Translations under genes and position numbers: made by a program
NCBI RefSeq assembly: GCF_052425735.1
Contig: NC_135769.1
Span: 28,892,001-28,956,000 of the forward strand
Reading direction: 5' to 3'
Length of the DNA: 64,000 nt
From: Oculina patagonica
Lineage: Eukaryota
The notes under the pieces: model-generated
The model's database searches: none
What the model was told of the DNA's origin: nothing
The model's input: only the letters and a program-made list of their open reading frames with translations
Shown here: positions 1,608-63,724 of the stretch, one piece after another
Numbering within the stretch: the stretch's first letter is position 1
Layout: every line of letters starts with the position of its first letter

Positions 1608-1825
1608 TTAAAGATAGTGGGATGTATGCATCCACTTGTCACCACACATTTACAGGCAATACAGTTTATTATCGACACATTGCTACTGCCTGTTATTTTG
1701 CATGTAGTTTCTTTTTGATTTTTTTGCAAATGAAAACAATTTGTGAGTCAAGAAGATTTGTAATTTTAGGCCGCCCTTGCTAATCCTGCACATTAGGGTG
1801 ATAAATATCTTTCCTGTTGTTCTAG

Positions 1826-2660
1826 GTATGCATCAGCCGTCAACTGTGATGTCTCCCTTCCTCAGCACTCCAATCCAGTCTGTAAGGCCATCAGGAATGC
1901 TGCTCTTGCTGAAAACAAGAAGACCTACACTTTGATACACGACCCAGCTTTGCATGGCTTTGCTCTGTTGAACATGACCGCGCAGGAGCTGGGAGCGGTT
2001 GCTCTGAAAGACCCGTTCATGAGATATGTTACAACAGCATATGTTGGAATGACACAAGCGAGCAGTAAAGTTTTTGATACGTACATCAACATAACACATG
2101 GACAAGAGTTCACGGAAATCGCAGATTATCTCAAGTTGTCAGCGTTTTTCCAAACATATTTTGAGCCGGTAGTTGGGGTAAATACTACATTTCTTTTTGG
2201 TTTTTTAAATTTTTAATAACATATACTTAAGTGTATTTTAATTTTAGTTCTACGTTTTATACATGAGCCTCTGGCTCGGACATTGAGGGAGACCTCGTCC
2301 CACGTATGAACAATAAAATTGTATTGTATTGTATTGTTATTATCTATAAAGAATACGATACCAGAGTTGAGAAAAGCTATTGGGTCTGGTAACTAAGGTA
2401 AATGGCCAGTCCAAATTGGGTACATTGTTGATATTAAAAAGTACATAAAGACTTGAAATTTATTCAAAGGCCTTGTTTCTTTACGAGTTTGCGATGTCAA
2501 TCCAGCTTTGTCATCATCATCAGCATCATCATTTGATTGGTTAACAGGAAATAGTATATGAGCTCATATACCATTGACCACAAATATGGTAGCCAAAACG
2601 CGTGAACGAAAACAGCTGGGGAGCTCAAATATTGCAATTCTTCGGGCGTTTTTAATAAAA

Positions 2661-2697
<37 letters not shown>

Positions 2698-5097
2698 AGC
2701 GAACTCGGCGCTACGCACCCCGTTGACTATTTACCATCTCATATCCAACGCGCTCTTGTGGAACTGCTGTTACATATAACAGCCTATTGTTCTGGTACTT
2801 AAAAATGAAAACCGAGGATAAAAATCTACTTTACTTAATATATTTTTTCTCTTTTAGGAATACGTGAGGCTACCATCCAAACACGAGGCGTTTATTAACG
2901 ACAAAACTAAATGGATCAGTGATAAGATCTTCACTCAGCAGCGTCTGGCAGGAGTTAATCCCATGTCAATCAAAAGGGTGACAATTCACGGAGAAGGTAG
3001 GACTGTTTCCTGGGTAACCATTAATACATTCCAGTACTTTTTTTCACATCAAATTACGTGATGACAGAAAAACAAACGTGCGATGGACACACGGAAAGGG
3101 GACTGATGAACAATTAAATAATCAGTTAGCCAGAGACCGGAAGAAACCCATCATTCAGAGAAATCCGCCATTCTTGTAAATGTCCAGGCGCAGATCGCCT
3201 GCTTGAATGTCCCTCCGTACATTGGATAATTCAAGTTTTACAATGTTCCTACATCGATTATAGCTGGTCTAACATATAACTTTGGCGATGCTTGGCAATC
3301 TGGCTAATATCATAATTTTTCTACGTAGGTATTATGAATTCGTACTTTAACGTTCCTTCTTGAATGTACTAAAATAGATGTTGCTGCATAAACGAATGTT
3401 TCTTTGTCGGTAATAATGCAAGTTTGATATCGTCTGTGTATAGCTATAATGTTTCTGCCTCCCTGTCATCTTACCTACTTTAACCTCTATTATAAACATG
3501 TCCCTTATGACTGGTATAATGCCACATGCTCTTAAAGTTGCCGTATTAAGACCACTTCTCAAGAAACAAGACGCCGATACTGAGCAACTACAAAACTTTC
3601 GGCCAATCTCAAATCTGAAATTTGTGTCTAAGCTGATAGAGAAAGCTGTTGCTTCGCAATTAAACGATCACATATTGAAGCACCACCTTGGTGAGACATT
3701 TCAATCTGCTTATAAAAGATTTCACAGCACAGAGACAGCCCTTGTAAGAGTTCACAATGATATTCTTACTGCTATCGACAACAATAACTCCGTTATTCTA
3801 CTTTTACTTGATTTATCGGCCGCCTTTGACACTGTAGACCATTTCATCTTATTATCAAGGCTATCTACTCGGTTTGGGATCAAAGGAACAGTACTTTCTT
3901 GGCTAAAATCATATTTAACATCACGTACACAGTTCGTTAAAGTCAATAACAGCAGATCTTCTCGACGTTTCTTGGAACGTGGAGTACCACAAGGATCAGT
4001 CCTTGGTCCTCTCTTATACTTACTGTATACATCACCTCTTGCCGACATTATTAAGCGTCACAACTTAGAGTACCATTTCTATGCTGACGACACACAGCTT
4101 TATGTGGCGTTAAAAACTGACAGTCTTGATAGAATGGCACAGTGTAAAACTTCGATTGAGCAGTGTGTCTGTGATATTGACAACTGGATGGCTGTCAACA
4201 AGCTCAAATTAAATCAAGAAAAGACTGAAGTTTTTCTTATCAGCTCAAGGTATCGCCCTAGGCCTCCTTTAGAGTCTTTTCAAATTGGCAATGTGAACGT
4301 TGTACCCACATCCTCAGCTCGAAATCTGGGCGCTATTTTTGATCAGTGTTTTAACCTTGAGGAACACATCAAATCAATCTGCAAGTCTTCTCATTACCAT
4401 ATAAGGAATCTAGCCAAAATTAGAAAGTACATTGATGAAGAGAGTGCCAAAACTGTTGTTCATGCCTTTATTACTTCGAAGTTGGATAACTGCAACTCAC
4501 TGCTATATGGTCTTCCACAGCATCTACTTTCAAGATTACAATCCGTTCAAAATACGGCAGCTTGAATTATTACACATACTAGGAAATTCGATCATATTAC
4601 CCCTGTGCTTAAGAAGCTACACTGGCTACCTGTCCGCTATCGTATAATTTACAAAATTCTCTTACTAGTCTACAAAGCTCTCCATGGGGCAGCGCCTTGC
4701 TACATGCAAGAGTTACTTTACTGTCACACCTCTCGGAGATTTTTAAGATCATCTACACAGCACCTTCTGGCGACCCCCAAAGCAAAATTAAAAACATATG
4801 GAGAGAGAGCGTTTGCCGTGGCAGCCCCAAGGCTGTGGAACACAATCCCACTTGAACTTAGATAAAGTCCTTCTATTGACATTTTTAAGAGACATTTAAA
4901 AAAGTACCTTTTTAAACAGGCTTTTTAATCATTATAATTTTTTTAGGTACATTTGAACTTATATTTGTAAATATCCGTTTTTAAAATTTTTAGAGCTTTT
5001 AACTTTTTAACATCATTTTATTAATATTTTTTTATTGTAAAGCGCCATGAGCAATTAGTGGATTTTGGCGCTATAAAAATACTTTTTATTATTATTA

Positions 5098-5137
<40 letters not shown>

Positions 5138-8100
5138 TCCTTCTTTTATGCAATGTACGGCGTTATAATGTCCCTATTTTGATAATATTAATATCGCTAA
5201 ATTCGTCATATTCCTTATAGAAAAAAGGAGATGTACAGTAAAGACAGAAGACGGAAGATGGTGTCATTTTCCATTTACCTATCGTGGTAAAGTTTACCAC
5301 AAGTGTACCACTGTTCGCCATCATAAAGCTTGGTGTTCAACTGCAGAAAAATACAGACCGGGCAGATGGGGAGTCTGTGCAGGTAATATAAGAATTCAAT
5401 ATGTAATCGACAGGACTTAAAAATTCCAATGTTCAAATATTTTTTTTTTATCTATTTATTTTAACTATATATTTTTTTGTTTATCTCATTGTTTAGAGGA
5501 AGACAAAAGCCCAGAAGAGGAACGTAAGTCCTACTATTAACTGACTTATATTTAGCAGTAATTAAAAAACAATGAACGATCGAAGCAAGCCATTGCGGAA
5601 GTATGCTTTAAATATAAAAAGGGTAATTGGCTAACTACCTCCTGCCAGTTGGGATTTTTTTATTTTAAACTGAAACTTGTTCTTTGGCAAAAGAAACTGA
5701 AGCACAAGTATATTTGTTATTCCAACAGTATTGTTGAACCGTTTTTTTTACTAACTTATTGTTACCTTTTCAGAAGCTTTGGACTGCACCGTTAAAACAA
5801 CAAAAGGCGAATGGTGCCATTTTCCATTCACCTACAAAGGAGTGAAATATGAAGAATGCACAAGAAAGGACTACTTTGCACCATGGTGTGCTACAAATGA
5901 TAAAAACAGATGGGGTGTCTGCGCAGGTAATAGCTCACATCTTCATAATCTTCATTTGGACGTGTTACGAGTAGCCCGGGAAGTTTTAAGCTTTAGCAAA
6001 CTAGGATGGCTTTTGATGTCGAGGTTCATGTTCTCCTAAAGCGAACGATATCCCATCCTGGGTAGTAAAGCAGGTCAAGTCGCAGGTTTGTCGGTGGCGT
6101 TTAAGAACCAGATTACACAGAGAAAGAGGTTATGTACTGTCTTAGGCTGCAAAGAGATCATGGGAAAAAGCTCCTTCAACGTACAGTATTAGAGCCCAAA
6201 TGTAATCATTTCATTGCTGAAGCATTTTTTTTCTCTTCTAGGAAAAGAACAGGAGAAAGAAGAGCAAGGTAGGTTTTAACAGGTTTAAAAATATAACATT
6301 AATATAGTATCGATTCCACCAAGGTAAATATAGCATGCATCACATGATCAATTTCTCATCCCGTCAAAGGCAGGATACTCAAAAATAATCTCCTAGAATA
6401 TCAGATAAAGGAAATTCGATTTGTACTTCTTCAGAGCCATCTCCCAGTCTTATTCTCTTTATGAATGTAATGCAGTAGCTGATATCCTACTTGTAGTTTA
6501 TGTTACACCAGTAAATGCTTGTTTATATTCACCTCTCCTTTTGACGATCAAATGCCTTGATAAGCAGACTGAAAACTCCACCTTCAAGTAATTGGCTTGG
6601 GTATTCTTCATCTTGCCCATGCAAGTCAGCAGTACTTATAATGCACCCGAACCTTTCAAAGTCCTGCTAGGTTACTTTGCTTGAAAAATAGAAAGAAACA
6701 TTAATTTGTAATGGTGATAATGTGTTTTCTCCTCAGGACCAGTAGGACTGGATTGGAACAAGTTGAAGGAGACGCTGAATCCTGAATTTGACTGGGATGC
6801 CGCTGTGCAAGCGGCTCTGAAGACTGGAGATTCTTTGGAAGATGTATGTCTTTTTTTGTTGTTGTTGTTGTTAATTTGGTAGCTAATAAAGAGAAGCACT
6901 ATACCTTAAACTTGTAGCCGGGTTGGCTGCATTAAAAAGGACTTTGAGTGAAACATATTTATTCCTCCTGATATCATAAGCTTAATAAAAAATACAAATA
7001 GACTGCAGAACATGTTACTTATAATTTTCAGGCAATAAACCAAGATCGTATCTACGCTCTGCGTTACGAGTTGTGTGATGACATGGACAGATCACCAGAC
7101 CTTACCGACAGAGATCCTGGAAGGACCATGTGGAACTTTCTCTCTCCCATTGCGCTCTTTGCATCTACGAAGGTTGGTGAATATAACATACTCGTGCCCG
7201 TCGCCATACAGATGGACTACACGCCAGGTTGGTAAAAACTAATCAATATGTATATATACCGACGTATGTTAATGCCACTGAACATCTTCTTGATATACTC
7301 GTGCCAAGAAAATAAGTTTAATCTCGTCAGGTTTTCAAATATGCAACCGTTTACTCAGACGTACTTGAATCCGCCTTACTGAGGATTGCTTAACTGTACT
7401 GAATTTTTTTCTTTTGGCGGACTTTTCCTAAAAGCAGGGTTTAAATTTAGTTGTGTTCTTCAATGGCTGATGTAGAAGTACTCATAGGCGCGTGGAGGTT
7501 GAGAATGGGTGTGGTGCAAGTGAAAAGAGGGAATGGGGGGGGGGGGGAGGGGGAGAAGCTAAGTGCCGCATTGTTCCAATAAAATCAAAAGCTTTTGGAT
7601 CTCTTGATTTTCTACTTTTCAACAAGTTAAAAAAGAGTGGCCCAGCCCCAGGTCCGCCACAGTTACTGTAATGTGAGCCAGCAGTGCGTTTTTCATTTGA
7701 GAGGATTGCCTCATGTCCATTTTTTCCCGTGGCACTTTGTTGTCTCATTGCTTGTATTATTTTGTATTGATTTTAAACCCGCGCGGTTTTTTATCCTGAC
7801 CGATAACTCTGTTTCACCAGATTCTGTGGTTTACACTCCAAGCGACGGAGACAACTGGTTGATTGCCAAACTCAATGTTCAAATCACGGATTTGGGATAC
7901 TCACAAATTGTTGAGCACCTCGCTAAGGTATGATTTGTTCCTTACACTTATCATGACTGTAAACTATAAGGCAATTGCAAATTTATAGTCATGCATGTAA
8001 TTTTCCCAAGTGACCACGGCTGCTTTAGCCGTTGCAGTGGCGTTCAGCTGCTTTGTGAATCTGTTTTCATCTTTTCAGGTCCATTATTTCATCGAGCCAT

Positions 8101-9155
8101 TCTGTGTCTCCTTAAAACGGACCTTGCCTCCTGTACATCCGCTGAATCAAATACTGAAGTATCACTGCCGAGAGGTGATTGTCCCTAACAAATTTGGAAC
8201 TCCTGCTTTAGTGAATGAAGCGCGGTTCATGGACCTTCTTTTTGCATATGGAAACGACGGTGCAATAAGACTCCTTCAAGATGCACATCCATTATCAACA
8301 TGGGAAGTGACAGATTTCAGGCGCAACATCAAGGTACCGCTTGCCTCACAATATATAGCGAGCTATTAAATTTGGTAACTAGCAACCACCATAGAATGAA
8401 ACTGCAGAAGAAATATAGTACCATTTTCATCAGGAATACTGCGTGGCTGACCTTGTTAAAGGGTTCATTGAGATCCAATTTTAACCTGAAGTTAATTGTG
8501 AAAACGTGAAAAATGAACGACAAAATTGTTATTATTTAAGTATTTAAGTCGACAATACGCAACTTAGACCTTCCAACTTAGATTCACTAACTATGCCTAT
8601 ACTACAAACAAACTGCATGGAATAAAACAATATATACAAAAATGTGTCCACGGTGCTTGACTACAAAAAACTGAGACAATTTTTTATATAGAACATGCAA
8701 ATTTGTATTAAAACAAAGCGTTTTCTCTTGCAAACAGGACTCGCATTGACGTTGGCCTGCTTGTTTGTTTTCTATCTTCCTTAAAAGGCCTAGGGAACGC
8801 ATATACTTTATTTTCATCCACAAGTCCAAGATAAAGTGTACAACTCAAATGCAATCGTAGCGCATTACCTCGATCCTAAGAAACGATAACGTAAACTAAA
8901 TGATGACAGGTAAAAAATGCCTATTCTAAATGACACTATCTATCTGTCTGTTTCCTTTTTTTTAATAACATGTCAAACTTTTCTTTTTCTTTGACTTTGC
9001 AAGAAACGCGGACTGGATGACAAAAAACTCCTGCCATACTTCCCTTACCGAGATGATGGTATAAAGATATTGGAAGTTATTGAACACATGGTGAAGAACT
9101 ATGTGAACTTGTAAGTGAAATAATAAAAAAACAACCTGTTTGCCTACCAAGTTCA

Positions 9156-9217
<62 letters not shown>

Positions 9218-11227
9218 CCGTTTTCAAAAACGTTTTCTTCAGAGAGATATATAGATAGATAGATACCTTTTGTTTAGAGTCGGTGAACCATGTTATTTTT
9301 GCATGAACCGCACGCTTGTTAACACCAGACTGTTAACAAAAACACACCCACGTGAGAAAACAAACTGAATATTCGAGTGTCTCAATTCCCTTAGATGGTT
9401 GACGGTTAAAAATAAGCCGTTTTCGCGGTTGATGGCGGCAAGGCCAAATGACGGATGACGGTTAATTTTATGGAATGACGGTTATAACAAGAAATTAAAT
9501 CAGCAAATTTGGCTGCAATTTTTCATAAAAGAGTACAATTTCGCCCACATTTTGACTTGCTCACCATCAGAGATCAAATTTGACTAATGCTTCTATTTGT
9601 CTTCCCGATGTTGTTATGGCATTTCTGTGTTCAAAAAGCTCCTCTGATTCAGTATCGCCGTAGGCACTGTCCACGGGTCACTTTCAATTTCTTGCCTGTA
9701 GCCAGACGAAAATACTACAAAGACAATAACAGAAAAAAGGCCCACTTCCTTCATATTTATATTTTTAATTCATAGCCTCTTACAGCATACTGAAACAAAT
9801 GAATAAATTCAGAATTTTTACTGAGGCACCGTGCCTCGGTTCGCCAGTTACTAACTACAGCCCTGAAATTCATTTACTTCAAAAGGTTCGCGCCCATTGA
9901 TTGTCCGGCGATTCCTTGTTTGCTATTCTTTTCTGAGGCCCCGTCCACACTGACCCGGGTAAATTTGAAAACGCATCTTTTTTTCTCCGGTTAGGCCAAC
10001 CGTCCACACTGAAACAGCGTTTTCGGTCACCGAAAACGGAGCTTTTCAAAAACGCTCACCAATGAGCGTTTGGACTTGGAGCGTGAAATAGTGTATTTTT
10101 ATATTTTATTGTAAATAATTTTAGAGGGCCACTGGTTTGTTAGTATTTTTTATGTTATTTTAGTGCTACCCTCGTTAAATAAAGACTTTACTTTTACTTT
10201 TACTTACTAATGAAGCGTATCGTTTTCAAATTTACCCGAGTTAATGTGGACGGAAAACATTTTACGCGGCGTTTTCAAATTTCTCCGTTTTCAAATTTAC
10301 CCGGGTCAGTGTGTACGGGGCCTGAGACTGAAGTATGTGCTTGATATCGTTTAATCAGTTTTTCCTTCTTACTTCGATGAGTGCTTACTTCCGCCTGAAC
10401 AGTCCCCCTCAAAAGACGCTTGACATCGTGCTTGGTAGAAGAGAAAGAGCCGCAAAAGCGAGATCATGCTTAGTAATTCTCAGTGACTCGTTTATGATCT
10501 GTAATTATAACACCAGTTATAAATTGAAAAGGCCGACGTTCTTCGACACCGGAAATGTTTCCAGACGGAAGTCGGTTTTGAATATTTAAACGAACATTTA
10601 TAAACAGCTTTACTTGACTTCATTTTAGTCACTCGTTGATATCCGAGACAGTCGACGGCTAATATTTTGCTGGCTTTATTGACGGTAAAAAATATTGCAT
10701 TTTTACTGTTGAAGGTTAATTTTTTGACCATTTGACAGTTGACGGTAAACCGCATTGCGATCCTCATATTGTTTTATCAAAATAAAAGGGTATTGATTGT
10801 GAAGAAATGAAGCTTTTCAGAATATCGTATCTCTTAGCTTTGGCGATCAAACATGCCAATTCGCGAGGAACGGACGTTCGCAGATCGTTCGCGAAAGCGT
10901 TGCAAAATGTTTGTTCGTTACGCCTAGTAACTTCGGTTTTGTGAGCGCTCTTCCGAGCTCCTAGAACAAGTCAAATAATTCGCCAACGCAAATCTTTACT
11001 AACAGGAGCGGGCATTTTCTGTCGCCTTTCTGTCCACGATCAATTCATTTTTATTTTGAAACAATTAATATGAGATTCATTTTGTTTTCTCATGTGGGTG
11101 TGTTTTTGTTAACAGTCTGGTGTTAACAAGCGTGCGGTTCATGCAAAAATAACATGGTTCACCGACTCTAAACAAAAGGTATCTATCTATCTATATATCT
11201 CTCTGAAGAAAACGTTTTTGAAAACGG

Positions 11228-11285
<58 letters not shown>

Positions 11286-11356
11286 CCGTTTTCAAAAACG
11301 TTTTCTTCAGAGAGATATATATATCTCTCTGAAGAAAACGTTTTTGAAAACGGGTG

Positions 11357-11428
<72 letters not shown>

Positions 11429-13438
11429 CCGTTTTCAAAAACGTTTTCTTCAGAGAGATATATAGATAGATAGATACCTTTTGTTTAGAGTCGGTGAACC
11501 ATGTTATTTTTGCATGAACCGCACGCTTGTTAACACCAGACTGTTAACAAAAACACACCCACATGAGAAAACAAAATGAATCTCATATTAATTGTTTCAA
11601 AATAAAAATGAATTGATCGTGGACAGAAAGGCGACAGAAAATGCCCGCTCCTGTTAGTAAAGATTTGCGTTGGCGAATTATTTGACTTGTTCTAGGAGCT
11701 CGGAAGAGCGCTCACAAAACCGAAGTTACTAGGCGTAACGAACAAACATTTTGCAACGCTTTCGCGAACGATCTGCGAACGTCCGTTCCTCGCGAATTGG
11801 CATGTTTGATCGCCAAAGCTAAGAGATACGATATTCTGAAAAGCTTCATTTCTTCACAATCAATACCCTTTTATTTTGATAAAACAATATGAGGATCGCA
11901 ATGCGGTTTACCGTCAACTGTCAAATGGTCAAAAAATTAACCTTCAACAGTAAAAATGCAATATTTTTTACCGTCAATAAAGCCAGCAAAATATTAGCCG
12001 TCGACTGTCTCGGATATCAACGAGTGACTAAAATGAAGTCAAGTAAAGCTGTTTATAAATGTTCGTTTAAATATTCAAAACCGACTTCCGTCTGGAAACA
12101 TTTCCGGTGTCGAAGAACGTCGGCCTTTTCAATTTATAACTGGTGTTATAATTACAGATCATAAACGAGTCACTGAGAATTACTAAGCATGATCTCGCTT
12201 TTGCGGCTCTTTCTCTTCTACCAAGCACGATGTCAAGCGTCTTTTGAGGGGGACTGTTCAGGCGGAAGTAAGCACTCATCGAAGTAAGAAGGAAAAACTG
12301 ATTAAACGATATCAAGCACATACTTCAGTCTCAGGCCCCGTACACACTGACCCGGGTAAATTTGAAAACGGAGAAATTTGAAAACGCCGCGTAAAATGTT
12401 TTCCGTCCACATTAACTCGGGTAAATTTGAAAACGATACGCTTCATTAGTAAGTAAAAGTAAAAGTAAAGTCTTTATTTAACGAGGGTAGCACTAAAATA
12501 ACATAAAAAATACTAACAAACCAGTGGCCCTCTAAAATTATTTACAATAAAATATAAAAATACACTATTTCACGCTCCAAGTCCAAACGCTCATTGGTGA
12601 GCGTTTTTGAAAAGCTCCGTTTTCGGTGACCGAAAACGCTGTTTCAGTGTGGACGGTTGGCCTAACCGGAGAAAAAAAGATGCGTTTTCAAATTTACCCG
12701 GGTCAGTGTGGACGGGGCCTCAGAAAAGAATAGCAAACAAGGAATCGCCGGACAATCAATGGGCGCGAACCTTTTGAAGTAAATGAATTTCAGGGCTGTA
12801 GTTAGTAACTGGCGAACCGAGGCACGGTGCCTCAGTAAAAATTCTGAATTTATTCATTTGTTTCAGTATGCTGTAAGAGGCTATGAATTAAAAATATAAA
12901 TATGAAGGAAGTGGGCCTTTTTTCTGTTATTGTCTTTGTAGTATTTTCGTCTGGCTACAGGCAAGAAATTGAAAGTGACCCGTGGACAGTGCCTACGGCG
13001 ATACTGAATCAGAGGAGCTTTTTGAACACAGAAATGCCATAACAACATCGGGAAGACAAATAGAAGCATTAGTCAAATTTGATCTCTGATGGTGAGCAAG
13101 TCAAAATGTGGGCGAAATTGTACTCTTTTATGAAAAATTGCAGCCAAATTTGCTGATTTAATTTCTTGTTATAACCGTCATTCCATAAAATTAACCGTCA
13201 TCCGTCATTTGGCCTTGCCGCCATCAACCGCGAAAACGGCTTATTTTTAACCGTCAACCATCTAAGGGAATTGAGACACTCGAATATTCAGTTTGTTTTC
13301 TCACGTGGGTGTGTTTTTGTTAACAGTCTGGTGTTAACAAGCGTGCGGTTCATGCAAAAATAACATGGTTCACCGACTCTAAACAAAAGGTATCTATCTA
13401 TCTATATATCTCTCTGAAGAAAACGTTTTTGAAAACGG

Positions 13439-13513
<75 letters not shown>

Positions 13514-26900: not shown

Positions 26901-29900
26901 AAGTCATGACCACAAACCCCCCGAGAGGCAGGGCGCCCACCCGCGGGAGCGAAGACGAGAGAGGGAGAGAGAAGAGACGAGCGAGAAGCCAGTGGCCACC
27001 ACCCCCCAGAAACCAACCGGAGGGCGCCGCAGCGCGACCCCCGCGCACGCGAACTGCGAAAGGAGCGAGAGGAAGCCCGACCAGACAGCCCTGCACAAGG
27101 ACCCCGCGACCGGGAAGCCGGAAAGGAGAGAGACGAGGGCGAGAACAGAGGAAAAGCAACCCCCCCCCCTCGGAAAGGGCCCGAGCAGGGCGGGAGGGAG
27201 GGGGAGGAAGTGGAGAAAGAAGAGGGACACGGGGGGAGGGGAGGAGAGAGACATGAGCCACAGGGGAGGCAGGGGGGAGGGGCAACGGAACTAATGACCG
27301 CCCACGGCGGGGACAAGCACGAGAGACTGAAACTGTCAGCCAACACCGCCGAACGTTGGCCATCCGTACCTTCTTTGTATTTGCTGTGTTATGAAATGTT
27401 TCTTCACTGTTTTAAGAGGTTATTTTTATATTTCAACGAATTTGATGGTCATTTTACATGCCTTAATTTAGCTACAATACGTGACACAGCCCTTTTATTA
27501 TATAACCTTAGTTCAAACTGAAAAACCTTAGGCTCATTAAATGAGTCAGATGTCTCGAACTAAGGTGTACACGCCAGTTGTCAAGCATGACACGTAATTT
27601 GACAGAATCACTAATTTTGATGCGCATTAACCGATAGAAAGTTTCCATTTTCTAACTGGGTGCAATATTAGCACACAATCGTTACAAATGAAAATGTACG
27701 GCGCACAGATAAGCGGTGACCGAAAAGTGCCCGTTAAGAGAGGTTAACTTTGTAAAAGGCGTGTGACTTAGGTTACAGAAAATATAAAGTGTCCGTTCTG
27801 TGTATTAACCAGCGTCCGTATTAGGTGGTTAAATGTAAAAAAAAAAGACTGTATGAGCTTTTTGACGGGACAAACAAAACAGTCCGTAAAGGCAGGCATC
27901 CGTAGATCGGGGTTCCACTTTTTAAGTTCTGTATTACCTTCATCACAGACTCCCCATCTGCCTTTGAAGTTTTCTGTTGTTGAACACCAAGGTTTGTGAT
28001 AATGAACAGTGGTACACTTTTGGTAAACTTGACCACGATAGGTAAATGGAAAATGGCACCATCTTCCGTCTTCTGTCTTTACTGTACATCTCCTTCTTTC
28101 TGTAAGAATCATTTAAAATTAAAGGTAGCATCCAATATGATGGAATCAATCTATTACCGAAGCCATTATCAACATTATCAACCAGAACATTGTATACATG
28201 AGAACATTCAAAATTCAAGTAGAAAGATTATTAAAGTTGTTATAATATTATTAATAAAGCTATACGTGGGGAGAACATAAAACGAACAGTATTAGGAATA
28301 TTTCGCAGTAGGAGCATTATTACAAGAAAGAAAGATTAGAAGATTTTAATGTATCTTAAATGGCAGTCGAGATTATTTTATTGAAGTTTGCGTCGATCAA
28401 GAGAAAGTAATGCCTAAAACATTTAAAATAATGTCAGCTTTCTTCCGAGAATGTATTTTGATGGATTTCCGGTAGTCTCTGACTAGCATACAACTCAATA
28501 GGCCATTATCGAATTATTTTCTGAGTTACCCTTTGCCTCCGTTTCAATACGAGTTTGATTTGCTTGAAAGTTAACCTGTTGGTAAAACTCGTTTTCATAT
28601 GAATAGTTTCGCAAGTAGACTCGTTTTAAAACAGAGGCAAAGGGTAACTTGGAAATGACCTATTGTTCACCAGTCCCCTGTCCGTGCGTCCACCACATAT
28701 TCAACTTTTACTGTTGCTTTGCCTGTNNNNNNNNNNNNNNNNNNNNNNNNNNNNNNNNNNNNNNNNNNNNNNNNNNNNNNNNNNNNNNNNNNNNNNNNNN
28801 NNNNNNNNNNNNNNNNNNNNNNNNNNNNNNNNNNNNNNNNNNNNNNNNNNNNNNNNNNNNNNNGTTACCAAGGAAACCGAGTCCTACCTTCTCCGTGAAT
28901 CGTCACTCTTTTGATTGACATGGGGTTGTGTCCCGCTAGGCGCTGCTGAGTGAAGAACTTATCACTGATCCATTCAGTTTTTTCGTTAATAAACGATTCG
29001 TGTCGTGATGGTAGCCTCACCCTTTCCTAAAAGACAATGTTTTAAATCACTGTGTTAATACCGTAGGAACTCTAATTCCTCAATGGAAACTGACGGAATT
29101 GACATTCGAGAATCGAGGATAATCATACTTTTAGCTTTGTCAAACAGCCTTTGCATGTTAGTTACTGTATTAACTGTCTGATTTTTGAAAATTACAGAGA
29201 AAAATCTAGGCCACTTTTTGTAGCATTAAACATTCTTAATATATACGAGTTAAATATATACCAAATGCCACTCTTTGTGTATTCCTACTTTAATGGTAAT
29301 CTACAAAGTTATTTTTGTTACTATTTTAGATTAAATGAAAAGATCCCTAGTCACAATACACGAACAGACTCAAACATATATATTGATTATAAAAGGACAA
29401 GTAATAGGACATTTTCATTAAAATTTAGGGGGCCCAAATATGAAACAATTTACCTAATGACCTGAAAATATTAAAATCATATCGACTATTTAAAAAATCA
29501 ACTAAAGACTATGTTCAAAATTGCATGCTTTCCTTTAAGCTAGGTTGTAATTAGTTTTTAAAATAGCAAATCCCACGTTAATATATTCAATCAATACTTA
29601 CGCATCCATCTGCTAAATTGTAAATAGTTTAAGTATGCATGGGGATCTTCTTAGAAAAGCTCAGTAGAGCTTGCTAAGATCTCCAACCATTATATACATT
29701 ATCTTCTGCAGCAGATTTATTTGTCATTCTTGTAAAAATAGAATAAATATGATGGAAATAAAGAAATTGATGTCTGTACAGGTCACTTATTACAAATGAG
29801 AGGAACGGTATTATGGAAATCAGGTGTAGGTAATGATTCTTGTAATGTTTAGATTAATAGTTTATTTACATGCATGTACCCGAAGATTTTTTTAAGTTTG

Positions 29901-46700: not shown

Positions 46701-47539
46701 TCGAACTAAGAGAAAAAATGATAGGTCACCGAACTCGTTTACTTTGAGAAAACGATGATTTCTTCTCACGCGAGCCAAGCCGCATCGAAAAAAGCCGCCA
46801 TTTTGTTTATGTGCGCGCGCTAATTACGGGTAACAATTCTGCGCAGTAAGGATGCGCAATGCAATACTAGGGAATCACCTTAATCAAGGCGCGTTTTTGC
46901 CATAAAGGCCACGTATGAATCGACTCAGATCTTAGTTACCCACCTTTAATTTCTTCTTCTCCTGAAAGACAAAAGAAATTAAATCGATTATGCATTTGAA
47001 TATAGTATTACTCCCGGTCCTGAGGAGATAAGACGTGAACATCGTCATTAAATAACCTCAACTTTCCTTCTCGAAAAAAAAAAAAACTACAAGGGCTCTA
47101 AGAGAGTTATTTGACTGTATTTCATTATGTACAGCTTAGGAGTATAAGTGGAAATGGTTAACTATATCTAATATATATAGTAAATGGTTTGAACCCAGGA
47201 GTATCAGTAGGTCGTATAGTACAGTTATAGTGTGATCGTCTGTGTGATAGTAGTTCTGAGAAGAACTGTTGTTGGTGACGGACGTTTAATTTCGACAACC
47301 TAAGTTTACGTAAAGTTTACGTAAACCTGAATTTACCTGCTATACAAATAAACAAGATAATCATACATTTTGTCTCACTGAGAAAGTCATCGTCTGATGT
47401 TGTCTAACTTGGTGCACGGTTGTATTTAATACTTTCGTATTTTGTTTTTACGGATAGGCCACTGACATAACCTAATTTTTTTTTCTTTAATCTAATATAT
47501 CAAAAACGAGAAAGTATCCTGGAGGCCCCGTCTCCTGCT

Positions 47540-48126: not shown

Positions 48127-48279
48127 CTTCACAGACACCCCATTTTTCCCCGTCATTTGTTGCACACCACGGCGCAGAGTAATCTTTTGTTGTACATTCC
48201 TCATATTTCACTCCTTTGTAGGTGAAAGGAAAGTGGCACCATTCGCCTTTTGTTGTCTTGACGGTACAGTCCCTGGCTT
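48127..48279 (-). CDS. LOX-C FN2 module 2 exon (phase 1-1, 153 nt)
   Basis: [51 protein letters not shown] with AG/GT boundaries. Confidence 0.88.
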
Positions 48280-49642
48280 CTAAAAAAAGTAACAACATTT
48301 ATTTTGTTAAAAAGAATCAAGCAGGGACAGGTAAATGACTAAGCATCATAGATGGCAAAAGTACTGATTGCAACCTATATGGTTCAATTACTTTATTAAT
48401 TTGATCGGTTAAACAAGAGCATTTCTGTTCTTGAAGGTATAATGTTTCCAAACATTCTAAAAAGTAGCTCTAGGACACCCCTCTGTAACAGACCCAGTGG
48501 AATCTTTATCCTCGCCGGGGTTTTAGGGAAAAAAATCACTGGGTTGGCCGAATTCCCACTGGGTCGGCTTATTTTCGACTAGGTTTTTTGCAACAGGTTT
48601 ATTCCAGGAGGGACTCCTGGTTTATTCGATAAAAAAATGGCCAATTGTGGAAAATGCGGGGTAGTTCACAAAGCCCTTTTATACATAGTTGTTACTTAAG
48701 CTACGTCGCGGACAACGTATCTTGAAAAAACTGGCAAGTTTTTTCAAGTTTCTCATACGTAATCCGTCTTAATCTTCATGAGTCAAGACCATCCTTGTTT
48801 ATTTTCTAGTTTTAAATACATTGTTGGTGTTTTGTGCGTCAGAAAACTATTATCTTCAGGTTTGGTTTCTTTTAATTTGAGAGTAATCAGAACTTAAATT
48901 AACGTGACATAGCACCTTTAAGTACAACTGACTCACCTTCTTCTTCATTGTTATCCTCTTCTAAACAATCAAAAATAAACGAAACAAATAAATAAAGGAA
49001 TAATTGAATACAAAACTTTTGACATAAAACGAATTCATCATCAGTCTATTGAATTTGTCAATAAAGTAACGCTAAAGATTAGTTTAAGTATATAAACTGA
49101 CTAACCTCCTCCACTGCTTTCCTCTTCTGACAACCAGAAAAAAAAAGAAGCATATCAGATAGATAGTTTTATTGAGGTTTTAAAGATACAGCAAGGGCTG
49201 AATTTGATAAAACAAATGTTAATCGCTAAAAAATATCTACTAGGTGATCTATTTACATAAAAACAAGTTAAAAAAGTTAAATTAATTAAGTTGAAAACAC
49301 AAGCAAATGCAAAAGGGAAAAAACCCGACTTTATACAATTACTATAAAAAAGTTATTTTATCAACCTGCGGAATCGTCTTTCTACTTCTTAGATCAGTTA
49401 AAATTACATTTATTGGGTGCAGGTAAAAATTTGAATAATTTGTGCTCACGGTTATTATTTATATCAAGAAACATTTTGACGGTTTGGGTCTGTCTCCGAT
49501 CGGAAAGTTCCTCTAAACTCGCAAGTCTTAGAGCCTCGCGATAAATAACATCAGAAAAGAAATATTTTAATACAAACGTTCGACATAAGAGAATTTCAAA
49601 ATCGTGTCTATTGATTTTTAAAGTTTCAAACTAATGTATTAC

Positions 49643-49801
49643 CTTCACAGACTCCCCATCTGCCTCTGTACTTTTCTGTAGTTGAACACCAAGCTTTATG
49701 GTAATGATCAGTGGTACACTTGTGGTAAACTTGACCACGATAGGTAAATGGAAAATGGCACCATCTTCCGTCTTCTGTCTTTACTGTACATCTCCCTTTT
49801 T
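49643..49801 (-). CDS. LOX-C FN2 module 1 exon
   Basis: [52 protein letters not shown]. The ancestral acceptor reads AC; an in-frame cryptic AG lies 6 nt inside. Confidence 0.8.
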
Positions 49802-61000: not shown

Positions 61001-63724
61001 CAACAGCTTTGTAAGTCTTTTGAACGAATTGATATACGACAATGACACTGTATTCTAAGCCTCTTCATCCAGTAAAAAAGTATATGTTTGGTTTACCCCG
61101 ATATAACGATATTTTCGGTCATTTTACGGCCATATCGTTATATCAGGAACTTCGATATAACGATTCCTCGATATAACGATATAAATTTACTGCTCCCTTG
61201 GCATATCGTTATATCGGGGTTCCACTGTATTAAATTGCTTCTCACATCGTAAACGTTAGGCGTTGGAACGTTTTTTTTATTAGCAATGCAATGTGTACTT
61301 GAAACTACTCACTCAAGACACCGCTACAACTCACTTTGATGTTCTTTCTATAATCTGTCACTTCCCATGTTGTAAGTGGATGGATATCTTGCAGAAGTCT
61401 CTGCGATCCCTGGCTTCCATATGCGAACAACAAAGTAGCAAGCCCTGTGTCTCCAAGTAGGACAGGACTTCCAAACGTGTTGGGGACAATCACCTCTCGG
61501 CAGTGATACTTGAGCATTTGGTTGAGTGGATGTACGGGAGGCAAGGTCCGTTTTAAGGAGACACAGAATGGCTCGATGAAATAATGGACCTGGAACGAGT
61601 TGTCAAGATAAAAAAATAATTCAAAGTTTACCTGACATGCAACGGTCATAAGAACAGCGGCTTGGTAAGTTTAGCTTTCGAACTATGGACTAGGCCTGTC
61701 CCGATTGTGCACGGCAGCTTTTGAGCAAAGTTTTCCGTTTGGAGGACGTTTGAAGCAACTTTTTGCGGTTCTAGCAACCTCGAGCAAGTTTTGCCTTTCT
61801 GAGTACCTTTTGAGCGAAATATAGGGTTTAAAGCACATTTCAAGCACGAAAACGTCAACGATTACATAGAAAACTTCAATTTATGCGAATTTGTCGAATG
61901 TTTATCAACCTTTTGAACACATAAACTGTCAATTGACAAAGTTTTTTCAGTCAGTTAGACTTCAGAGTATTCTTAAATATTTTTGTGCAACTGTTTAAAG
62001 CTAAGTTTCACGCTTTTTTTCTTGACCGATGTTAGCAATTATTGAGAAGAACGAAAAATAAAGCTTTTTAATAACGTTAATTTAAAAATATCAAGAAATT
62101 TAGAAATCAACTTTTTTGTATTTCTGGCAATTGTTTCTTTAGCAACTTTTTGGCATTCCAGTGAGCAACTTTCCAGCATTTTGCGAACACAATCGGGACA
62201 GGCATAGACCACGTCAATAAGTCACATAAAGGGGTTTAAATATCGCATTTGTAAGTGCAGAATCAGGTTTAAGAATAGTATTTTATAAAATATATAATAA
62301 CTAATTTTGACGCAAAGCCAAGCAATGGCAAAACATCAAGATTTTGTTGCTGTGGGGTATTGATGATGATAGATGTCAGTAAAACAAAATTACAGTAAAA
62401 TTTTTTTGCCAACCTGTTTTGCCGGGAAAATAATTATGAATGAAATGCACCTATGTTTAACTAAAAACCGACGAACACCTGCATGCATTTTCTCGACAAT
62501 AATTTGCCTTGTACTTCAGTTAACAGTTTTTTTTTTCAGTTACCCTAGCGAGGTGCTCCGCAATTTGAGAATATCCTAAGTCCGTGATTTGAACATTGAG
62601 TTTGGCAAGCATCCAGTTGTCTCCATCATTGGGGGTGTAAACGGCTGAATCTGGCAAAAACACAATTAATTTCAGGTAAGGAACACACAAAAAAGTAATG
62701 AGAAAACATACATACTTCACGTGAAACAACGTAAGGTATGTTAAAGCCTTTATGTTATTTAAAGATATTAGTATAATTTTGTATAGCATCAAATGGTTAG
62801 GAGAATTTTTATTTCCCCTGGAAGGGATTCTAGTTTATTGCATGTTTTTTTTTTCAAAAATTCAGCGGTTCCCATTTATCGCACTCCTGTATGGATGAAA
62901 AGAAGCCCTGAGCGAGATGGTGAAAGTATTTAAAATGTCACCGATCGAAAGTCTGTCTTGTTTGGTTTTACGAAATCCAGAGTTGAAACACCACCTCTGT
63001 AAAAGAACTGATGATGATAAGCGGTTCGATTAAAACATTGACAGGCCGGACAAAAATCTACGGGGTGCTCTGTGCCCCGGTAAATAGACGTTTTATGGGT
63101 ACGAAAATAATTTAACGCAAACGATACATCTCGCCAGGACGTTAAAGAAACTGACTATATCTAGGATTTTTTCAACTACCAGGCCTAGAACCGATATGGC
63201 CGTGTCATATGGATTATATGAATTTGATGCAATGATAAACATTTCCGTCTCATATACACTAAACAGATAAGTTGCAACAGTGGTATGAATATATTTTGGA
63301 TATTTACCTGGTCTGAAGTCCATTTGTATGGCAACGGGCACAAGTTCATTGAAACGACCAACTTTCGCAGATGCAAACAAAGCAATGGGAGAGAGAAAGT
63401 TCCACATGGTCCTTTTAGGATCTCTATCTGTAAGGTCCGGTGATCTGTCCATGTCGTCGCACAACTCGTAACGGAGAGCATAGATGCGACCCTGTCTTAT
63501 GGCCTAAAAAGGTAATTGAATTAACAACTTAGAAGCGTGTTGCTTATATCTTTCCTTATAAGTCAGAAGGTCAGTCAGTCAGTCAGTCAGTCAGTCAGTC
63601 ATAAATCAATAACATACATCTTCCAAGGAATCATCAGTCTTAAGAGCCGCTTGCACGGCAGCTTCCCAGTCAAATTCAGGATTCAGTGTTTCCTTCAACT
63701 TGTTCCAATCAAGTCCTACTGGTC
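58079..63724 (-). CDS. LOX-D: lipoxygenase paralog closest to LOX-B, 3' portion (5' exons beyond window end)
   Basis: Eight intact exons with canonical splice sites and the same lengths as LOX-A: 63724-63618, 63503-63308, 62650-62544, 61589-61335, 60607-60501, 59807-59705, 59228-59010, 58312-58079 (WLPNGIQT, TAA). Motifs EHLARVH and YHASVN. Confidence 0.92.
58645..58906 (-). mobile_element. tRNA-derived SINE in the last intron of LOX-D
   Basis: Minus strand GGGGAGCAGGGA-TGACCCAGTGG (A box) ... GGTTCAATTCC (B box) ... gggtttttctccgggttctccggttt core. Confidence 0.8.
60718..61227. mobile_element. pogo/Tc1-mariner-type MITE
   Basis: ta|CAGTGGAACCCCGATATAACGAT ... ATCGTTATATCGGGGTTCCACTG|ta; many internal CGATATAACGAT repeats; absent from the homologous LOX-B intron. 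Confidence 0.88.
61691..62206. mobile_element. Non-autonomous TIR element with TA-starting termini and 3 bp TSD (Academ-like)
   Basis: gac|TAGGCCTGTCCCGATTGTG ... CACAATCGGGACAGGCATA|gac. The empty site gaactatggaccacgtcaa is present in the paralogous LOX-B intron at about 24790-24809. Confidence 0.75.

What the first reader, a model, noticed from the sequence alone, without database searches (positions are those of the whole stretch)
5221..6268. Variable cassette of symmetric phase-1 exons: exon shuffling and possible isoform switching
Seen: every insert exon is phase 1-1 and a multiple of 3 nt. LOX-A has FN2(162), EEDKSPEEE(27), FN2(153), GKEQEKEEQ(27). LOX-C has FN2(159), EEESSGG(21), EEDNNEEE(24), FN2(153), GEEEIK(18). 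LOX-B shows only one FN2. Known: phase-1 symmetric modules are the classic signature of exon shuffling in extracellular animal proteins. Inference: any subset can be skipped in frame, giving enzymes with 0, 1 or 2 FN2 modules, and module number differs between paralogs.
Basis: partly seen in the sequence, partly recalled or inferred. Interest (0 to 1): 0.72.

Follow-up and report, generated by a model that had tools for sequence, protein, structure and literature searches.

The report
FN2 exon cassette inside coral lipoxygenase
Four small exons (two fibronectin type II modules, each followed by a 27-base acidic micro-exon) are really spliced into the middle of a secreted lipoxygenase gene of the stony coral Oculina patagonica. 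It is a clean, RNA-confirmed case of exon shuffling, but there is no sign in this species that the exons are switched on and off.

Summary
Window 5221-6268 carries four AG/GT-bounded, phase 1-1 exons of 162, 27, 153 and 27 nt. They belong to LOX-A, RefSeq XP_078349098-100 of Oculina patagonica. Spliced contigs from three studies join every exon to its neighbour, both micro-exons included; a DNA-like run shows no such joints.

The cassette sits in a phase-1 intron inside the lipoxygenase catalytic domain, between the '...QQRLAG.NP...' exon and the 'GPVGLDW' exon. The protein has a signal-peptide-like start and no PLAT domain.

Evidence for exon shuffling:
- An FN2-less paralog keeps an empty phase-1 intron at the same site.
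- Sea-anemone relatives lack FN2.
- Porites has the same FN2|micro|FN2|micro layout.
- Most other FN2 exons sampled in this genome also look phase 1-1.
- Module number varies across stony corals: 0, 1, 2 or 6.

Isoform switching is not supported here. The three RefSeq LOX-A isoforms differ only in the first 17 residues, and no skipping joint was listed. RefSeq models in Montipora do list 2-, 1- and 0-FN2 isoforms of single genes.

Small corrections: FN2-1 of LOX-C is 153 nt, not 159. LOX-C lacks a core exon, LOX-B is disrupted, and LOX-D has one FN2.

I found no paper describing this architecture.

The parts
1826..2177 (+). LOX-A exon E1, the N-terminal helical part of the lipoxygenase catalytic domain (phase 2 to 0)
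   Evidence: ORF conserved in LOX-B, C and D. Joint 2177|2858 seen in runs X1 and X2. P0066 residues 14-136 map here.
2858..2996 (+). LOX-A exon E2 (139 nt, phase 0 to 1). It encodes the W..D..F..QQRLAG.NP motif and is the exon directly upstream of the cassette.
   Evidence: Joints 2177|2858 and 2996|5221. P0066:1-182 matches Pfam Lipoxygenase profile positions 134-214.
5221..5382 (+). FN2-1 exon (162 nt, phase 1-1)
   Evidence: PF00040 E 2.7e-15. AG/GT borders and phase by script. Joints 2996|5221 and 5382|5497.
5497..5523 (+). Micro-exon 1 (27 nt, EEDKSPEEE, phase 1-1), an acidic linker
   Evidence: Joints 5382|5497 (X1, X2; X3 with one extra letter) and 5523|5774 (X1, X2, X3). Present in P0066. 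Model pLDDT below 50 at residues 239-247.
5774..5926 (+). FN2-2 exon (153 nt, phase 1-1)
   Evidence: PF00040 E 6.7e-9. Joints 5523|5774 and 5926|6242. Phase by script.
6242..6268 (+). Micro-exon 2 (27 nt, GKEQEKEEQ, phase 1-1), an acidic linker
   Evidence: Joints 5926|6242 and 6268|6737 in X1, X2 and X3. Counterparts by position and flanks: 18 nt in LOX-C (46961-46944) and 18 nt in LOX-D.
6737..6843 (+). LOX-A exon E4 (107 nt, phase 1 to 0, starts GPVGLDW). The catalytic domain resumes here.
   Evidence: Joint 6268|6737, and an X2 contig that runs on to 7032-7227.
7032..7227 (+). LOX-A exon E5 (ends ...[11 protein letters not shown])
   Evidence: X2 record 22 links 6735-6842 to 7032-7227.
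49643..49795 (-). LOX-C FN2-1 exon (153 nt with a true AG acceptor, phase 1-1)
   Evidence: Matches P0074 at 100%.
49106..49126 (-). LOX-C micro-exon (21 nt, EEESSGG). Model only.
   Evidence: Present in GenBank model KAL9957186.1. No RNA test was run here.
48937..48960 (-). LOX-C micro-exon (24 nt, EEDNNEEE). Model only.
48127..48279 (-). LOX-C FN2-2 exon (153 nt, phase 1-1)
46944..46961 (-). LOX-C micro-exon (18 nt, GEEEIK). Its flanks match those of the LOX-D micro-exon.
27938..28099 (-). LOX-B, the only FN2 exon (162 nt, phase 1-1)
63618..63724 (-). LOX-D exon E4. Its single FN2 exon (162 nt) and an 18-nt micro-exon (EEQEMK) lie just past the window end, at L001 2541-2380 and 1377-1360.

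Best explanation
The stretch is the module cassette of LOX-A, one of four clustered lipoxygenase genes of Oculina patagonica (chromosome-scale contig C12). The enzyme is a PLAT-less iron lipoxygenase whose N-terminus looks like a signal peptide.

A phase-1 intron splits the catalytic domain after the '...QQRLAG.NP...TIHGE' exon. Inside that intron sit two FN2 modules, each on its own exon, and each followed by a 27-nt acidic micro-exon. All four exons are symmetric (phase 1-1) and were spliced in wherever RNA was examined.

Shown:
- the exon borders and the splicing;
- the position inside the lipoxygenase domain;
- an empty phase-1 intron at the same site in an FN2-less paralog;
- the same layout in Porites;
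- a variable module number across stony corals.

Inferred origin: an FN2 exon was inserted into this intron in a stony-coral ancestor, then duplicated, and later lost or multiplied in different lineages.

Inferred function: the two FN2 beads hang on floppy acidic linkers off the catalytic core. They would tether or aim the secreted enzyme, either at a collagen-like or skeletal matrix (as FN2 does in gelatinases) or at choline-lipid surfaces (as in PDC-109). That would partly replace the membrane-binding PLAT domain the enzyme lacks.

In O. patagonica the cassette behaves as constitutive exons, not as a switch.
For: - Exon table with AG/GT borders and phases.
- Six GT..AG joints linking E1-E2-FN2-micro-FN2-micro-E4 in runs X1, X2 and X3, which come from three studies. 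None appears in the DNA-like run X16, which carries the intron contiguously.
- RefSeq and GenBank proteins P0066, P0172 and P0173 contain the exact cassette peptide.
- Pfam finds Lipoxygenase plus two fn2 and no PLAT. Residues 98-178 match Lipoxygenase profile positions 134-214, so the cassette lies inside the domain.
- The AF2 model has mean pLDDT 89.6. The cassette scores 53-82 and the linkers below 50. The best fold match is the PLAT-less CspLOX2, TM 0.82 by target.
- The metal-ligand positions His439, His444, His626 and Asn630 are conserved.
- The FN2-less paralog on C9 ends E2 with '...CAA G|GTAAGT' and starts E4 after '...TTTAG|AA CAA GTG', a phase-1 intron at the same site.
- Anemone relatives lack FN2. 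FN2-bearing genes cluster on the tree, with FN2-less genes nested among them.
- Porites lutea locus L025 has the same four phase 1-1 exons. Desmophyllum locus L004 has FN2, a 24-nt micro-exon and a second FN2.
- By a simple splice-site heuristic, 13-14 of 16 other FN2 exons sampled in this genome look phase 1-1.
- The closest solved FN2 sequences are those of MMP-2 and MMP-9, E about 1e-18, with the aromatic core kept.
- Eight lipoxygenases are reported in the Desmophyllum skeletal matrix proteome (bioRxiv 10.64898/2026.03.24.713908).
- The criteria for exon shuffling are taken from PMC8001218.
Against: - Secretion rests on the look of the N-terminus, the conserved cysteines and the extracellular nature of FN2. 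No signal-peptide predictor or localisation data were available.
- The ligand of the FN2 pair is untested. It is not known whether the skeletal-matrix lipoxygenases of Desmophyllum are the FN2-bearing ones (one search found nothing).
- The runs are labelled 'RNA?' by guess. Their RNA nature is inferred from the joints.
- Contigs cannot give inclusion levels, and 9 weaker joints were not displayed.
- The tree used a quick search and has open nodes. It needs at least 3-5 gains or losses, so the order of events is not fixed.
- The C-terminal residue is Thr, not the usual Ile.
Confidence: 0.82

Rival explanations
1. One reading: the cassette is a regulated switch. Tissue- or stress-dependent skipping of any subset of the phase 1-1 exons would give LOX-A enzymes with 0, 1 or 2 FN2 modules in Oculina.
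For: - Every exon is 3n and phase 1-1, so all skips stay in frame.
- RefSeq lists 745-, 684- and 631-aa isoforms (2, 1 and 0 FN2) for single Montipora foliosa and M. capricornis genes. For the pairs compared, the 631-aa (0-FN2) isoforms are 96-100% identical to the 745-aa form before the cassette and 99.8% after it; the 684-aa pairs aligned only end to end (85-90%).
- Small cassette-border variants exist in Porites and in the Oculina C1 paralog.
- PMC8001218 notes that shuffled 3n modules suit exon skipping.
Against: - LOX-A isoforms X1-X3 differ only in residues 1-17.
- All listed joints in three runs are inclusion joints. No E2|E4, FN2-1|FN2-2 or FN2-2|E4 joint was listed.
- Shorter transcript-derived Pocillopora, Acropora and unlabelled coral proteins are N-terminal truncations, not skips.
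- The Montipora isoforms are models with no transcript-derived cluster members.
Confidence: 0.15
2. The FN2 cassette is ancestral to this lipoxygenase clade and the FN2-less genes are all secondary losses. The empty phase-1 intron would then be a scar rather than the recipient site.
For: FN2-less genes nest inside FN2-bearing clades: Plut_e_0 beside Plut_d_1, and Montipora 631-aa genes inside the 2-FN2 clade. Losses therefore do happen. FN2-less Montipora genes keep the linker 'IIEEKIE'.
Against: The sea-anemone outgroups and the basal coral branches, including the Oculina C9 pair, lack FN2. No FN2-bearing lipoxygenase was found outside Scleractinia.
Confidence: 0.1
3. The micro-exons or the whole cassette are gene-model artefacts, or the FN2 exons belong to a separate gene nested in an intron.
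For: Exons of 18-27 nt are easy to over-predict. The LOX-B and LOX-C models are clearly forced, with a cryptic donor in one and read-through of an insertion in the other.
Against: In LOX-A, spliced contigs of three studies cross both sides of both micro-exons and tie FN2-1 to E2 and micro-exon 2 to E4.
Confidence: 0.02

Closest known systems
Gelatinases MMP-2 and MMP-9, which carry FN2 repeats inserted in the catalytic domain
   Same: FN2 modules are spliced into the middle of an enzyme's catalytic domain and project from it. Their FN2 sequences are the closest solved relatives (E 5.7e-19 and 1.3e-18). From my own knowledge, one FN2 per exon is also described for the human MMP-2 gene.
   Different: The host enzyme is a lipoxygenase, not a zinc protease. 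There are two modules (0-6 across the family), not three. The modules are separated by acidic micro-exon linkers. Collagen binding is untested here.
PLAT-less 'mini' lipoxygenase CspLOX2 of Cyanothece (PDB 5mef, 5med)
   Same: It is the best fold match to the model (TM 0.82 by target). There is no PLAT domain, and an N-terminal helical extension takes its place.
   Different: It is bacterial and has no FN2 insert. Sequence identity is only about 21%.
Cnidarian lipoxygenases studied so far: coral 8R-LOX of the AOS-LOX fusion (PDB 3fg1, 4qwt) and 11R-LOX (3vf1)
   Same: Same catalytic fold and metal-ligand motifs. [quoted passage not shown]
   Different: Those enzymes have a PLAT domain and, from my own knowledge, are cytosolic or membrane-associated. 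This family has a signal-peptide-like start, no PLAT, no AOS part, and FN2 modules.
Seminal plasma protein PDC-109 (BSP), made of two tandem FN2 domains
   Same: A pair of FN2 domains joined by a short linker (match E 2.5e-10). From my own knowledge it binds choline phospholipids, which offers a route to lipid surfaces.
   Different: It is a free-standing small protein and not part of an enzyme. The binding residues were not compared here.
Class 1-1 mobile modules of exon shuffling (Patthy; PMC8001218)
   Same: One domain per exon, introns of phase 1 on both sides, exon length 3n, in an extracellular protein.
   Different: The recipient is the inside of a catalytic domain rather than a domain boundary. 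The module travels with separate micro-exon linkers.

Membership tests
Lipoxygenase (Pfam PF00305, iron lipoxygenases) | Profile match above the curated cut-off | tested here: met
   P0066 scores 146 bits against a cut-off of 23.6. Single exons also match.
Lipoxygenase (Pfam PF00305, iron lipoxygenases) | Metal ligands: H-x4-H on one helix and H-x3-N on another | tested here: met
   His444 and His626 are invariant. His439 and Asn630 are at least 90% conserved in 82 sequences.
Lipoxygenase (Pfam PF00305, iron lipoxygenases) | C-terminal Ile whose carboxylate binds the metal | tested here: inconclusive
   The family ends in ...NGIHT...NGIQT or ...NGVQS. A terminal carboxylate is present, but the residue is Thr or Ser.
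Lipoxygenase (Pfam PF00305, iron lipoxygenases) | Lipoxygenase catalytic fold | tested here: met
   Foldseek matches to CspLOX2, 8R-LOX and 5-LOX at E 1e-28 to 1e-31.
Typical animal lipoxygenase architecture | N-terminal PLAT (beta-barrel) domain | tested here: not met
   No PLAT hit in Pfam. The N-terminus is helical in the model. The best fold match is a PLAT-less enzyme.
Fibronectin type II domain (PF00040) | Profile match above the cut-off for each module | tested here: met
   56.5 and 36 bits against a cut-off of 22.2. Two stretches are found in P0066.
Fibronectin type II domain (PF00040) | Four conserved Cys and the aromatic core (FPF, Y, W) | tested here: met
   Aligned with the MMP-2 and MMP-9 FN2 repeats. 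One extra N-terminal Cys per module was noted.
Fibronectin type II domain (PF00040) | Binds collagen/gelatin or choline lipids | not testable with these tools
   Needs binding assays.
Exon-shuffled class 1-1 module | Domain borders coincide with introns of the same phase, and exon length is 3n | tested here: met
   All four LOX-A exons are phase 1-1. The same holds in LOX-B, C and D and in Porites.
Exon-shuffled class 1-1 module | The recipient intron, in the same phase, exists in relatives without the module | tested here: met
   The FN2-less Oculina paralog on C9 has a phase-1 intron of about 1.45 kb at the same site.
Exon-shuffled class 1-1 module | The module is absent from outgroup orthologs | tested here: met
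   The Nematostella, Actinia and Actineria proteins lack it.
Exon-shuffled class 1-1 module | The same module occurs in unrelated genes of the genome with the same phase | tested here: met
   At least 150 FN2 exons genome-wide. 13-14 of 16 sampled look phase 1-1 by a splice-site heuristic.
Alternatively spliced cassette exons | Transcripts with and without the exon in the same organism | tested here: not met
   O. patagonica LOX-A shows inclusion joints only, and its isoforms differ only in residues 1-17. The method cannot exclude rare forms.
Alternatively spliced cassette exons | Skipped forms in related species | tested here: inconclusive
   Montipora RefSeq models of 745, 684 and 631 aa come from one gene each. 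No transcript-derived sequences were seen for them.

The most novel reading that the evidence does not exclude
Stony corals make a family of secreted lipoxygenases in which an inserted FN2 pair replaces the PLAT domain as the targeting device. Frame-neutral skipping of the FN2 exons, modelled in Montipora, would toggle the enzyme between a form tethered to matrix, skeleton or membrane and a free form. That would set where oxylipins are made, for example at wounds, at the calcifying interface or in mucus.
Probability: 0.2. Interest if true: 0.7.

Novelty: new variant of a known kind. Interest (0 to 1): 0.52.

Why it matters
- **Exon shuffling.** This is an unusually clean, RNA-verified example outside vertebrates. 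The mobile module, its linkers, the recipient intron and module-free paralogs are all still visible in one genome.
- **Convergence.** The outcome matches gelatinases, with FN2 inside a catalytic domain, but the host is a different enzyme class.
- **Coral biology.** It points to an extracellular lipoxygenase family that may act on or near the matrix or skeleton. Lipoxygenases have been reported in a coral skeletal proteome.
- **Annotation.** The family is currently hidden under automatic names such as '5-lipoxygenase-like' or 'AOS-LOX-like'.
- **Limit.** The sequences and models are already public, so the gain is in interpretation, not in new sequence.

Tried and rejected
- I first took the large exon 1826-2177 as the cassette's upstream neighbour. 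It ends in phase 0, which cannot join a phase-1 exon. The missing 0-to-1 exon, E2 at 2858-2996, turned up through an A-versus-B conserved block.
- I considered that 1826-2177 might be a separate small gene or an unknown domain, because Pfam gave no hit. This is rejected. It is joined to E2 in RNA, and residues 98-178 match the Lipoxygenase profile.
- I looked for FN2-skipped transcript-derived proteins in the Pocillopora, Acropora and unlabelled coral clusters. The shorter members are N-terminal truncations.
- I tried to fetch the Montipora loci for exon checks. They are not on record, so I used Porites instead.
- I searched the supplements of two skeletal-proteome papers for lipoxygenase or FN2 and found nothing.
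- Literature searches for an FN2-bearing lipoxygenase found none.
- Only one reads call was allowed, so LOX-B, C and D were not tested for transcription.
Full report
**What is in the sequence.** The window is animal DNA of about 37% G+C. It maps to contig C12:28892001-28956000 of the genome under scan. Its predicted proteins match RefSeq and GenBank entries of the stony coral Oculina patagonica.

A pattern scan finds five FN2-like open frames. Two lie on the + strand at 5232-5378 and 5785-5922. Three lie on the - strand near 49.7, 48.2 and 28.0 kb. Pfam confirms fn2 for the two + strand frames and Lipoxygenase for downstream exons.

Comparing the four paralog regions with each other gives the conserved exon blocks:
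- LOX-A, + strand, 1826-16517
- LOX-B, - strand, 31833-20969
- LOX-C, - strand, 50657-40134
- LOX-D, - strand, from beyond the window end down to 58080

**Exon borders.** Reading the DNA and a script give this table for LOX-A:

| Exon | Coordinates | Length | Phase in to out |
|---|---|---|---|
| E1 | 1826-2177 | 352 nt | 2 to 0 |
| E2 | 2858-2996 | 139 nt | 0 to 1 |
| FN2-1 | 5221-5382 | 162 nt | 1 to 1 |
| micro-exon 1 | 5497-5523 | 27 nt | 1 to 1 |
| FN2-2 | 5774-5926 | 153 nt | 1 to 1 |
| micro-exon 2 | 6242-6268 | 27 nt | 1 to 1 |
| E4 | 6737-6843 | 107 nt | 1 to 0 |

Every exon has an AG acceptor and a GT donor.

In LOX-C the micro-exons of 21, 24 and 18 nt and FN2-2 (153 nt) are as stated. 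FN2-1 is 153 nt when bounded by a real AG; the 159-nt version would need an AC acceptor. LOX-B has one FN2 exon of 162 nt.

**Is it transcribed as read?** Contigs of three runs from three studies (X1, X2, X3) were laid on 1750-7400. They show GT..AG joints at 2177|2858, 2996|5221, 5382|5497, 5523|5774, 5926|6242 and 6268|6737. Each micro-exon is crossed on both sides, and in X1 the two joints flanking micro-exon 2 have the same depth (146.9) and one contig each, consistent with a single contig crossing both.

A fourth run, X16, carries 5886-6804 contiguously and has none of these joints. It therefore behaves as DNA, and the joined form is not a processed copy.

The RefSeq proteins XP_078349098, XP_078349099 and XP_078349100 (747 aa; XP_078349099 has the same sequence as GenBank KAL9957184.1) read ...TIHGE | EKRRC..GVCA | EEDKSPEEE | QALDC..GVCA | GKEQEKEEQ | GPVGLDW....

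**What the gene is.** Pfam finds Lipoxygenase and two fn2 domains in P0066 and no PLAT domain. Residues 98-178, before the cassette, match Lipoxygenase profile positions 134-214. In the FN2-less paralog P0082 one match runs straight through the site. The cassette is therefore inside the catalytic domain.

The AlphaFold model built on an 82-sequence alignment has mean pLDDT 89.6. The core is above 90, the FN2 region scores 53-82, and the three linkers score below 50. This fits folded beads on flexible acidic strings. The best solved fold is the PLAT-less CspLOX2, followed by coral 8R-LOX and human 5-LOX. The metal-ligand His and Asn positions are conserved.

The N-terminus (MKRLIFLLSLIGGLITAS...) looks like a signal peptide, and two Cys in E1 are nearly invariant. 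Secretion is an inference from these features.

**Exon shuffling.** The criteria are that domain borders coincide with introns and that the modules are symmetric, mostly class 1-1 (PMC8001218). Both criteria hold here. There is further support:
- An FN2-less Oculina paralog on C9 ends E2 with '...CAA G|GTAAGT' and starts E4 after '...TTTAG|AA CAA GTG'. That is an empty phase-1 intron of about 1.45 kb at the same site.
- Sea-anemone relatives have no FN2.
- On a quick tree with the cassette columns removed, the FN2-bearing genes group together. FN2-less coral and anemone genes lie outside the group, and a few FN2-less genes are nested within it. This implies one gain plus later losses, with at least 3-5 changes in all.
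- Porites lutea, from the other deep branch of stony corals, has the same layout: FN2, then 21 nt, then FN2, then 30 nt, all phase 1-1. Desmophyllum has FN2, a 24-nt micro-exon and a second FN2.
- The genome holds at least 150 FN2 exons. Of 16 sampled, 13-14 look phase 1-1 by a simple splice-site heuristic.

Module number per gene:

| FN2 modules | Where |
|---|---|
| 2 | LOX-A, LOX-C, the Oculina C1 paralog, Porites, Acropora, most Montipora |
| 1 | LOX-B, LOX-D, Pocillopora, one Porites gene, one Montipora gene |
| 6 | one Montipora gene of 950 aa |
| 0 | several genes |

**Isoform switching.** This part is not borne out for the gene in question. The three RefSeq isoforms of LOX-A are all 747 aa and differ only within residues 1-17, which points to alternative first exons. 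All joints listed by the reads tool are inclusion joints. Shorter transcript-derived proteins in the Pocillopora, Acropora and unlabelled coral clusters are N-terminal truncations.

Two limits apply. Contigs drop rare forms, and 9 less-supported joints were not displayed.

In favour of the idea, RefSeq models in Montipora foliosa and M. capricornis give isoforms of 745, 684 and 631 aa with adjacent accession numbers. For the pairs compared, the 631-aa forms are 96-100% identical to the 745-aa form before the cassette and 99.8% identical after it; the 684-aa pairs aligned only end to end, at 85-90%. I could not check their RNA support. I put regulated switching in Oculina LOX-A at about 15%.

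**State of the paralogs.**
- LOX-C lacks E2 altogether. The GenBank model bridges the gap with a cryptic donor, so the gene is probably not functional as modelled.
- In LOX-B, a GC-rich stretch of about 0.85 kb that is unique in the genome occupies the place of FN2-2, the linkers and E4. Both public models read oddly across it.
- LOX-D, completed from the neighbouring 10 kb, has a signal-peptide exon, E1, E2, one FN2 exon of 162 nt, an 18-nt micro-exon (EEQEMK) and E4. Its FN2 is of the six-Cys 'CC.FPF' type, which is also found in Pocillopora.

**Function (inference).** By sequence, the closest solved FN2 modules are those of MMP-2 and MMP-9, then fibronectin and PDC-109, and the aromatic core is kept.

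The parallel with gelatinases, which also carry FN2 inside a catalytic domain, suggests tethering to a collagen-like matrix. The PDC-109 parallel suggests binding to choline lipids, which could stand in for the missing PLAT domain. A preprint reports eight lipoxygenases in the Desmophyllum skeletal matrix, but I could not tell whether those carry FN2. I found no paper that describes a lipoxygenase with FN2 modules.

**Verdict.** Isoform switching is unsupported here but not excluded. The genes are already in public annotation under generic names; the architecture itself appears undescribed. My reading agrees with that note and was reached from the data above.

Noticed in passing
window 26500-27356 (LOX-B, - strand): A GC-rich stretch of about 0.85 kb with strong strand skew and a (CCAA)n run. 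It is unique in the genome apart from its last 65 nt. It sits where FN2-2, the micro-exons and exon E4 should be, and exon E5 has lost its AG acceptor. RefSeq XP_078348510.1 reads through it. Its origin is unexplained.
   Followed up: partly
window 50330-49800 (LOX-C intron) and the missing E2: LOX-C has no copy of the 139-nt exon E2 that carries the QQRLAG.NP motif. The short intron in its place holds a hairpin-like inverted repeat near 50040-49920. The GenBank model uses a cryptic donor and an odd 5' extension, so LOX-C is likely a pseudogene or a mis-model.
   Followed up: partly
window 3450-4862: A long open frame with reverse-transcriptase-like sequence lies in LOX-A intron 2, probably a non-LTR retroelement fragment. 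It is covered by contigs in three of the four runs laid and only partly in X2. No Pfam check was run on it.
   Followed up: no
window 2506-2694: Very high summed contig depth in all four runs (up to 300,000 in X16), with many ragged joints. This is a high-copy dispersed repeat in LOX-A intron 1.
   Followed up: no
window 10332-10773 and 11883-12324: Identical open frames on opposite strands flank (TA)n-rich sequence inside the 5.4-kb LOX-A intron. This is an inverted duplication.
   Followed up: no
G000 C14:4.93-5.00 Mb, also C7, C13 and C1: The genome holds at least 150 FN2 exons, including an array of about 30 within 70 kb on C14. FN2 is a strongly expanded module in this coral.
   Followed up: partly
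P0030, P0045, P0047, P0050 (hits to window 1827-2177): The E1 segment of the lipoxygenase matches 3-9 tandem stretches in long proteins of 802-3125 aa from elsewhere. The N-terminal helical piece may exist as a repeat unit in its own right.
   Followed up: no
FN2 exons of LOX-A, B and C versus LOX-D (L001 2541-2380): Coral FN2 modules carry an extra N-terminal Cys. Its likely partner, the first C of 'CC.FPF', is present in LOX-D, Pocillopora, the six-module Montipora gene and many non-LOX FN2 exons. In LOX-A, B and C it is replaced by Trp ('WCHFPF'), which leaves an odd Cys per module.
   Followed up: no
L004 14979-15140 (Desmophyllum pertusum): The second FN2 exon loses its frame in a run of seven A. 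The gene model skips it, ends early, and is named 'Cation-independent mannose-6-phosphate receptor', which is a misnomer for a lipoxygenase fragment.
   Followed up: partly
L025 near 19052 (Porites lutea): Isoform X1 has a three-residue extension (VLS) at the start of FN2-2, which would need a non-AG acceptor. Isoform X2 uses the canonical TTTCAG nine bases downstream.
   Followed up: no
LOX-A 5' end, upstream of 1826: RefSeq isoforms X1-X3 differ only in residues 1-17, which suggests alternative signal-peptide first exons. The X3 first exon (the only one searched for) was not found in the window by exact peptide search.
   Followed up: partly
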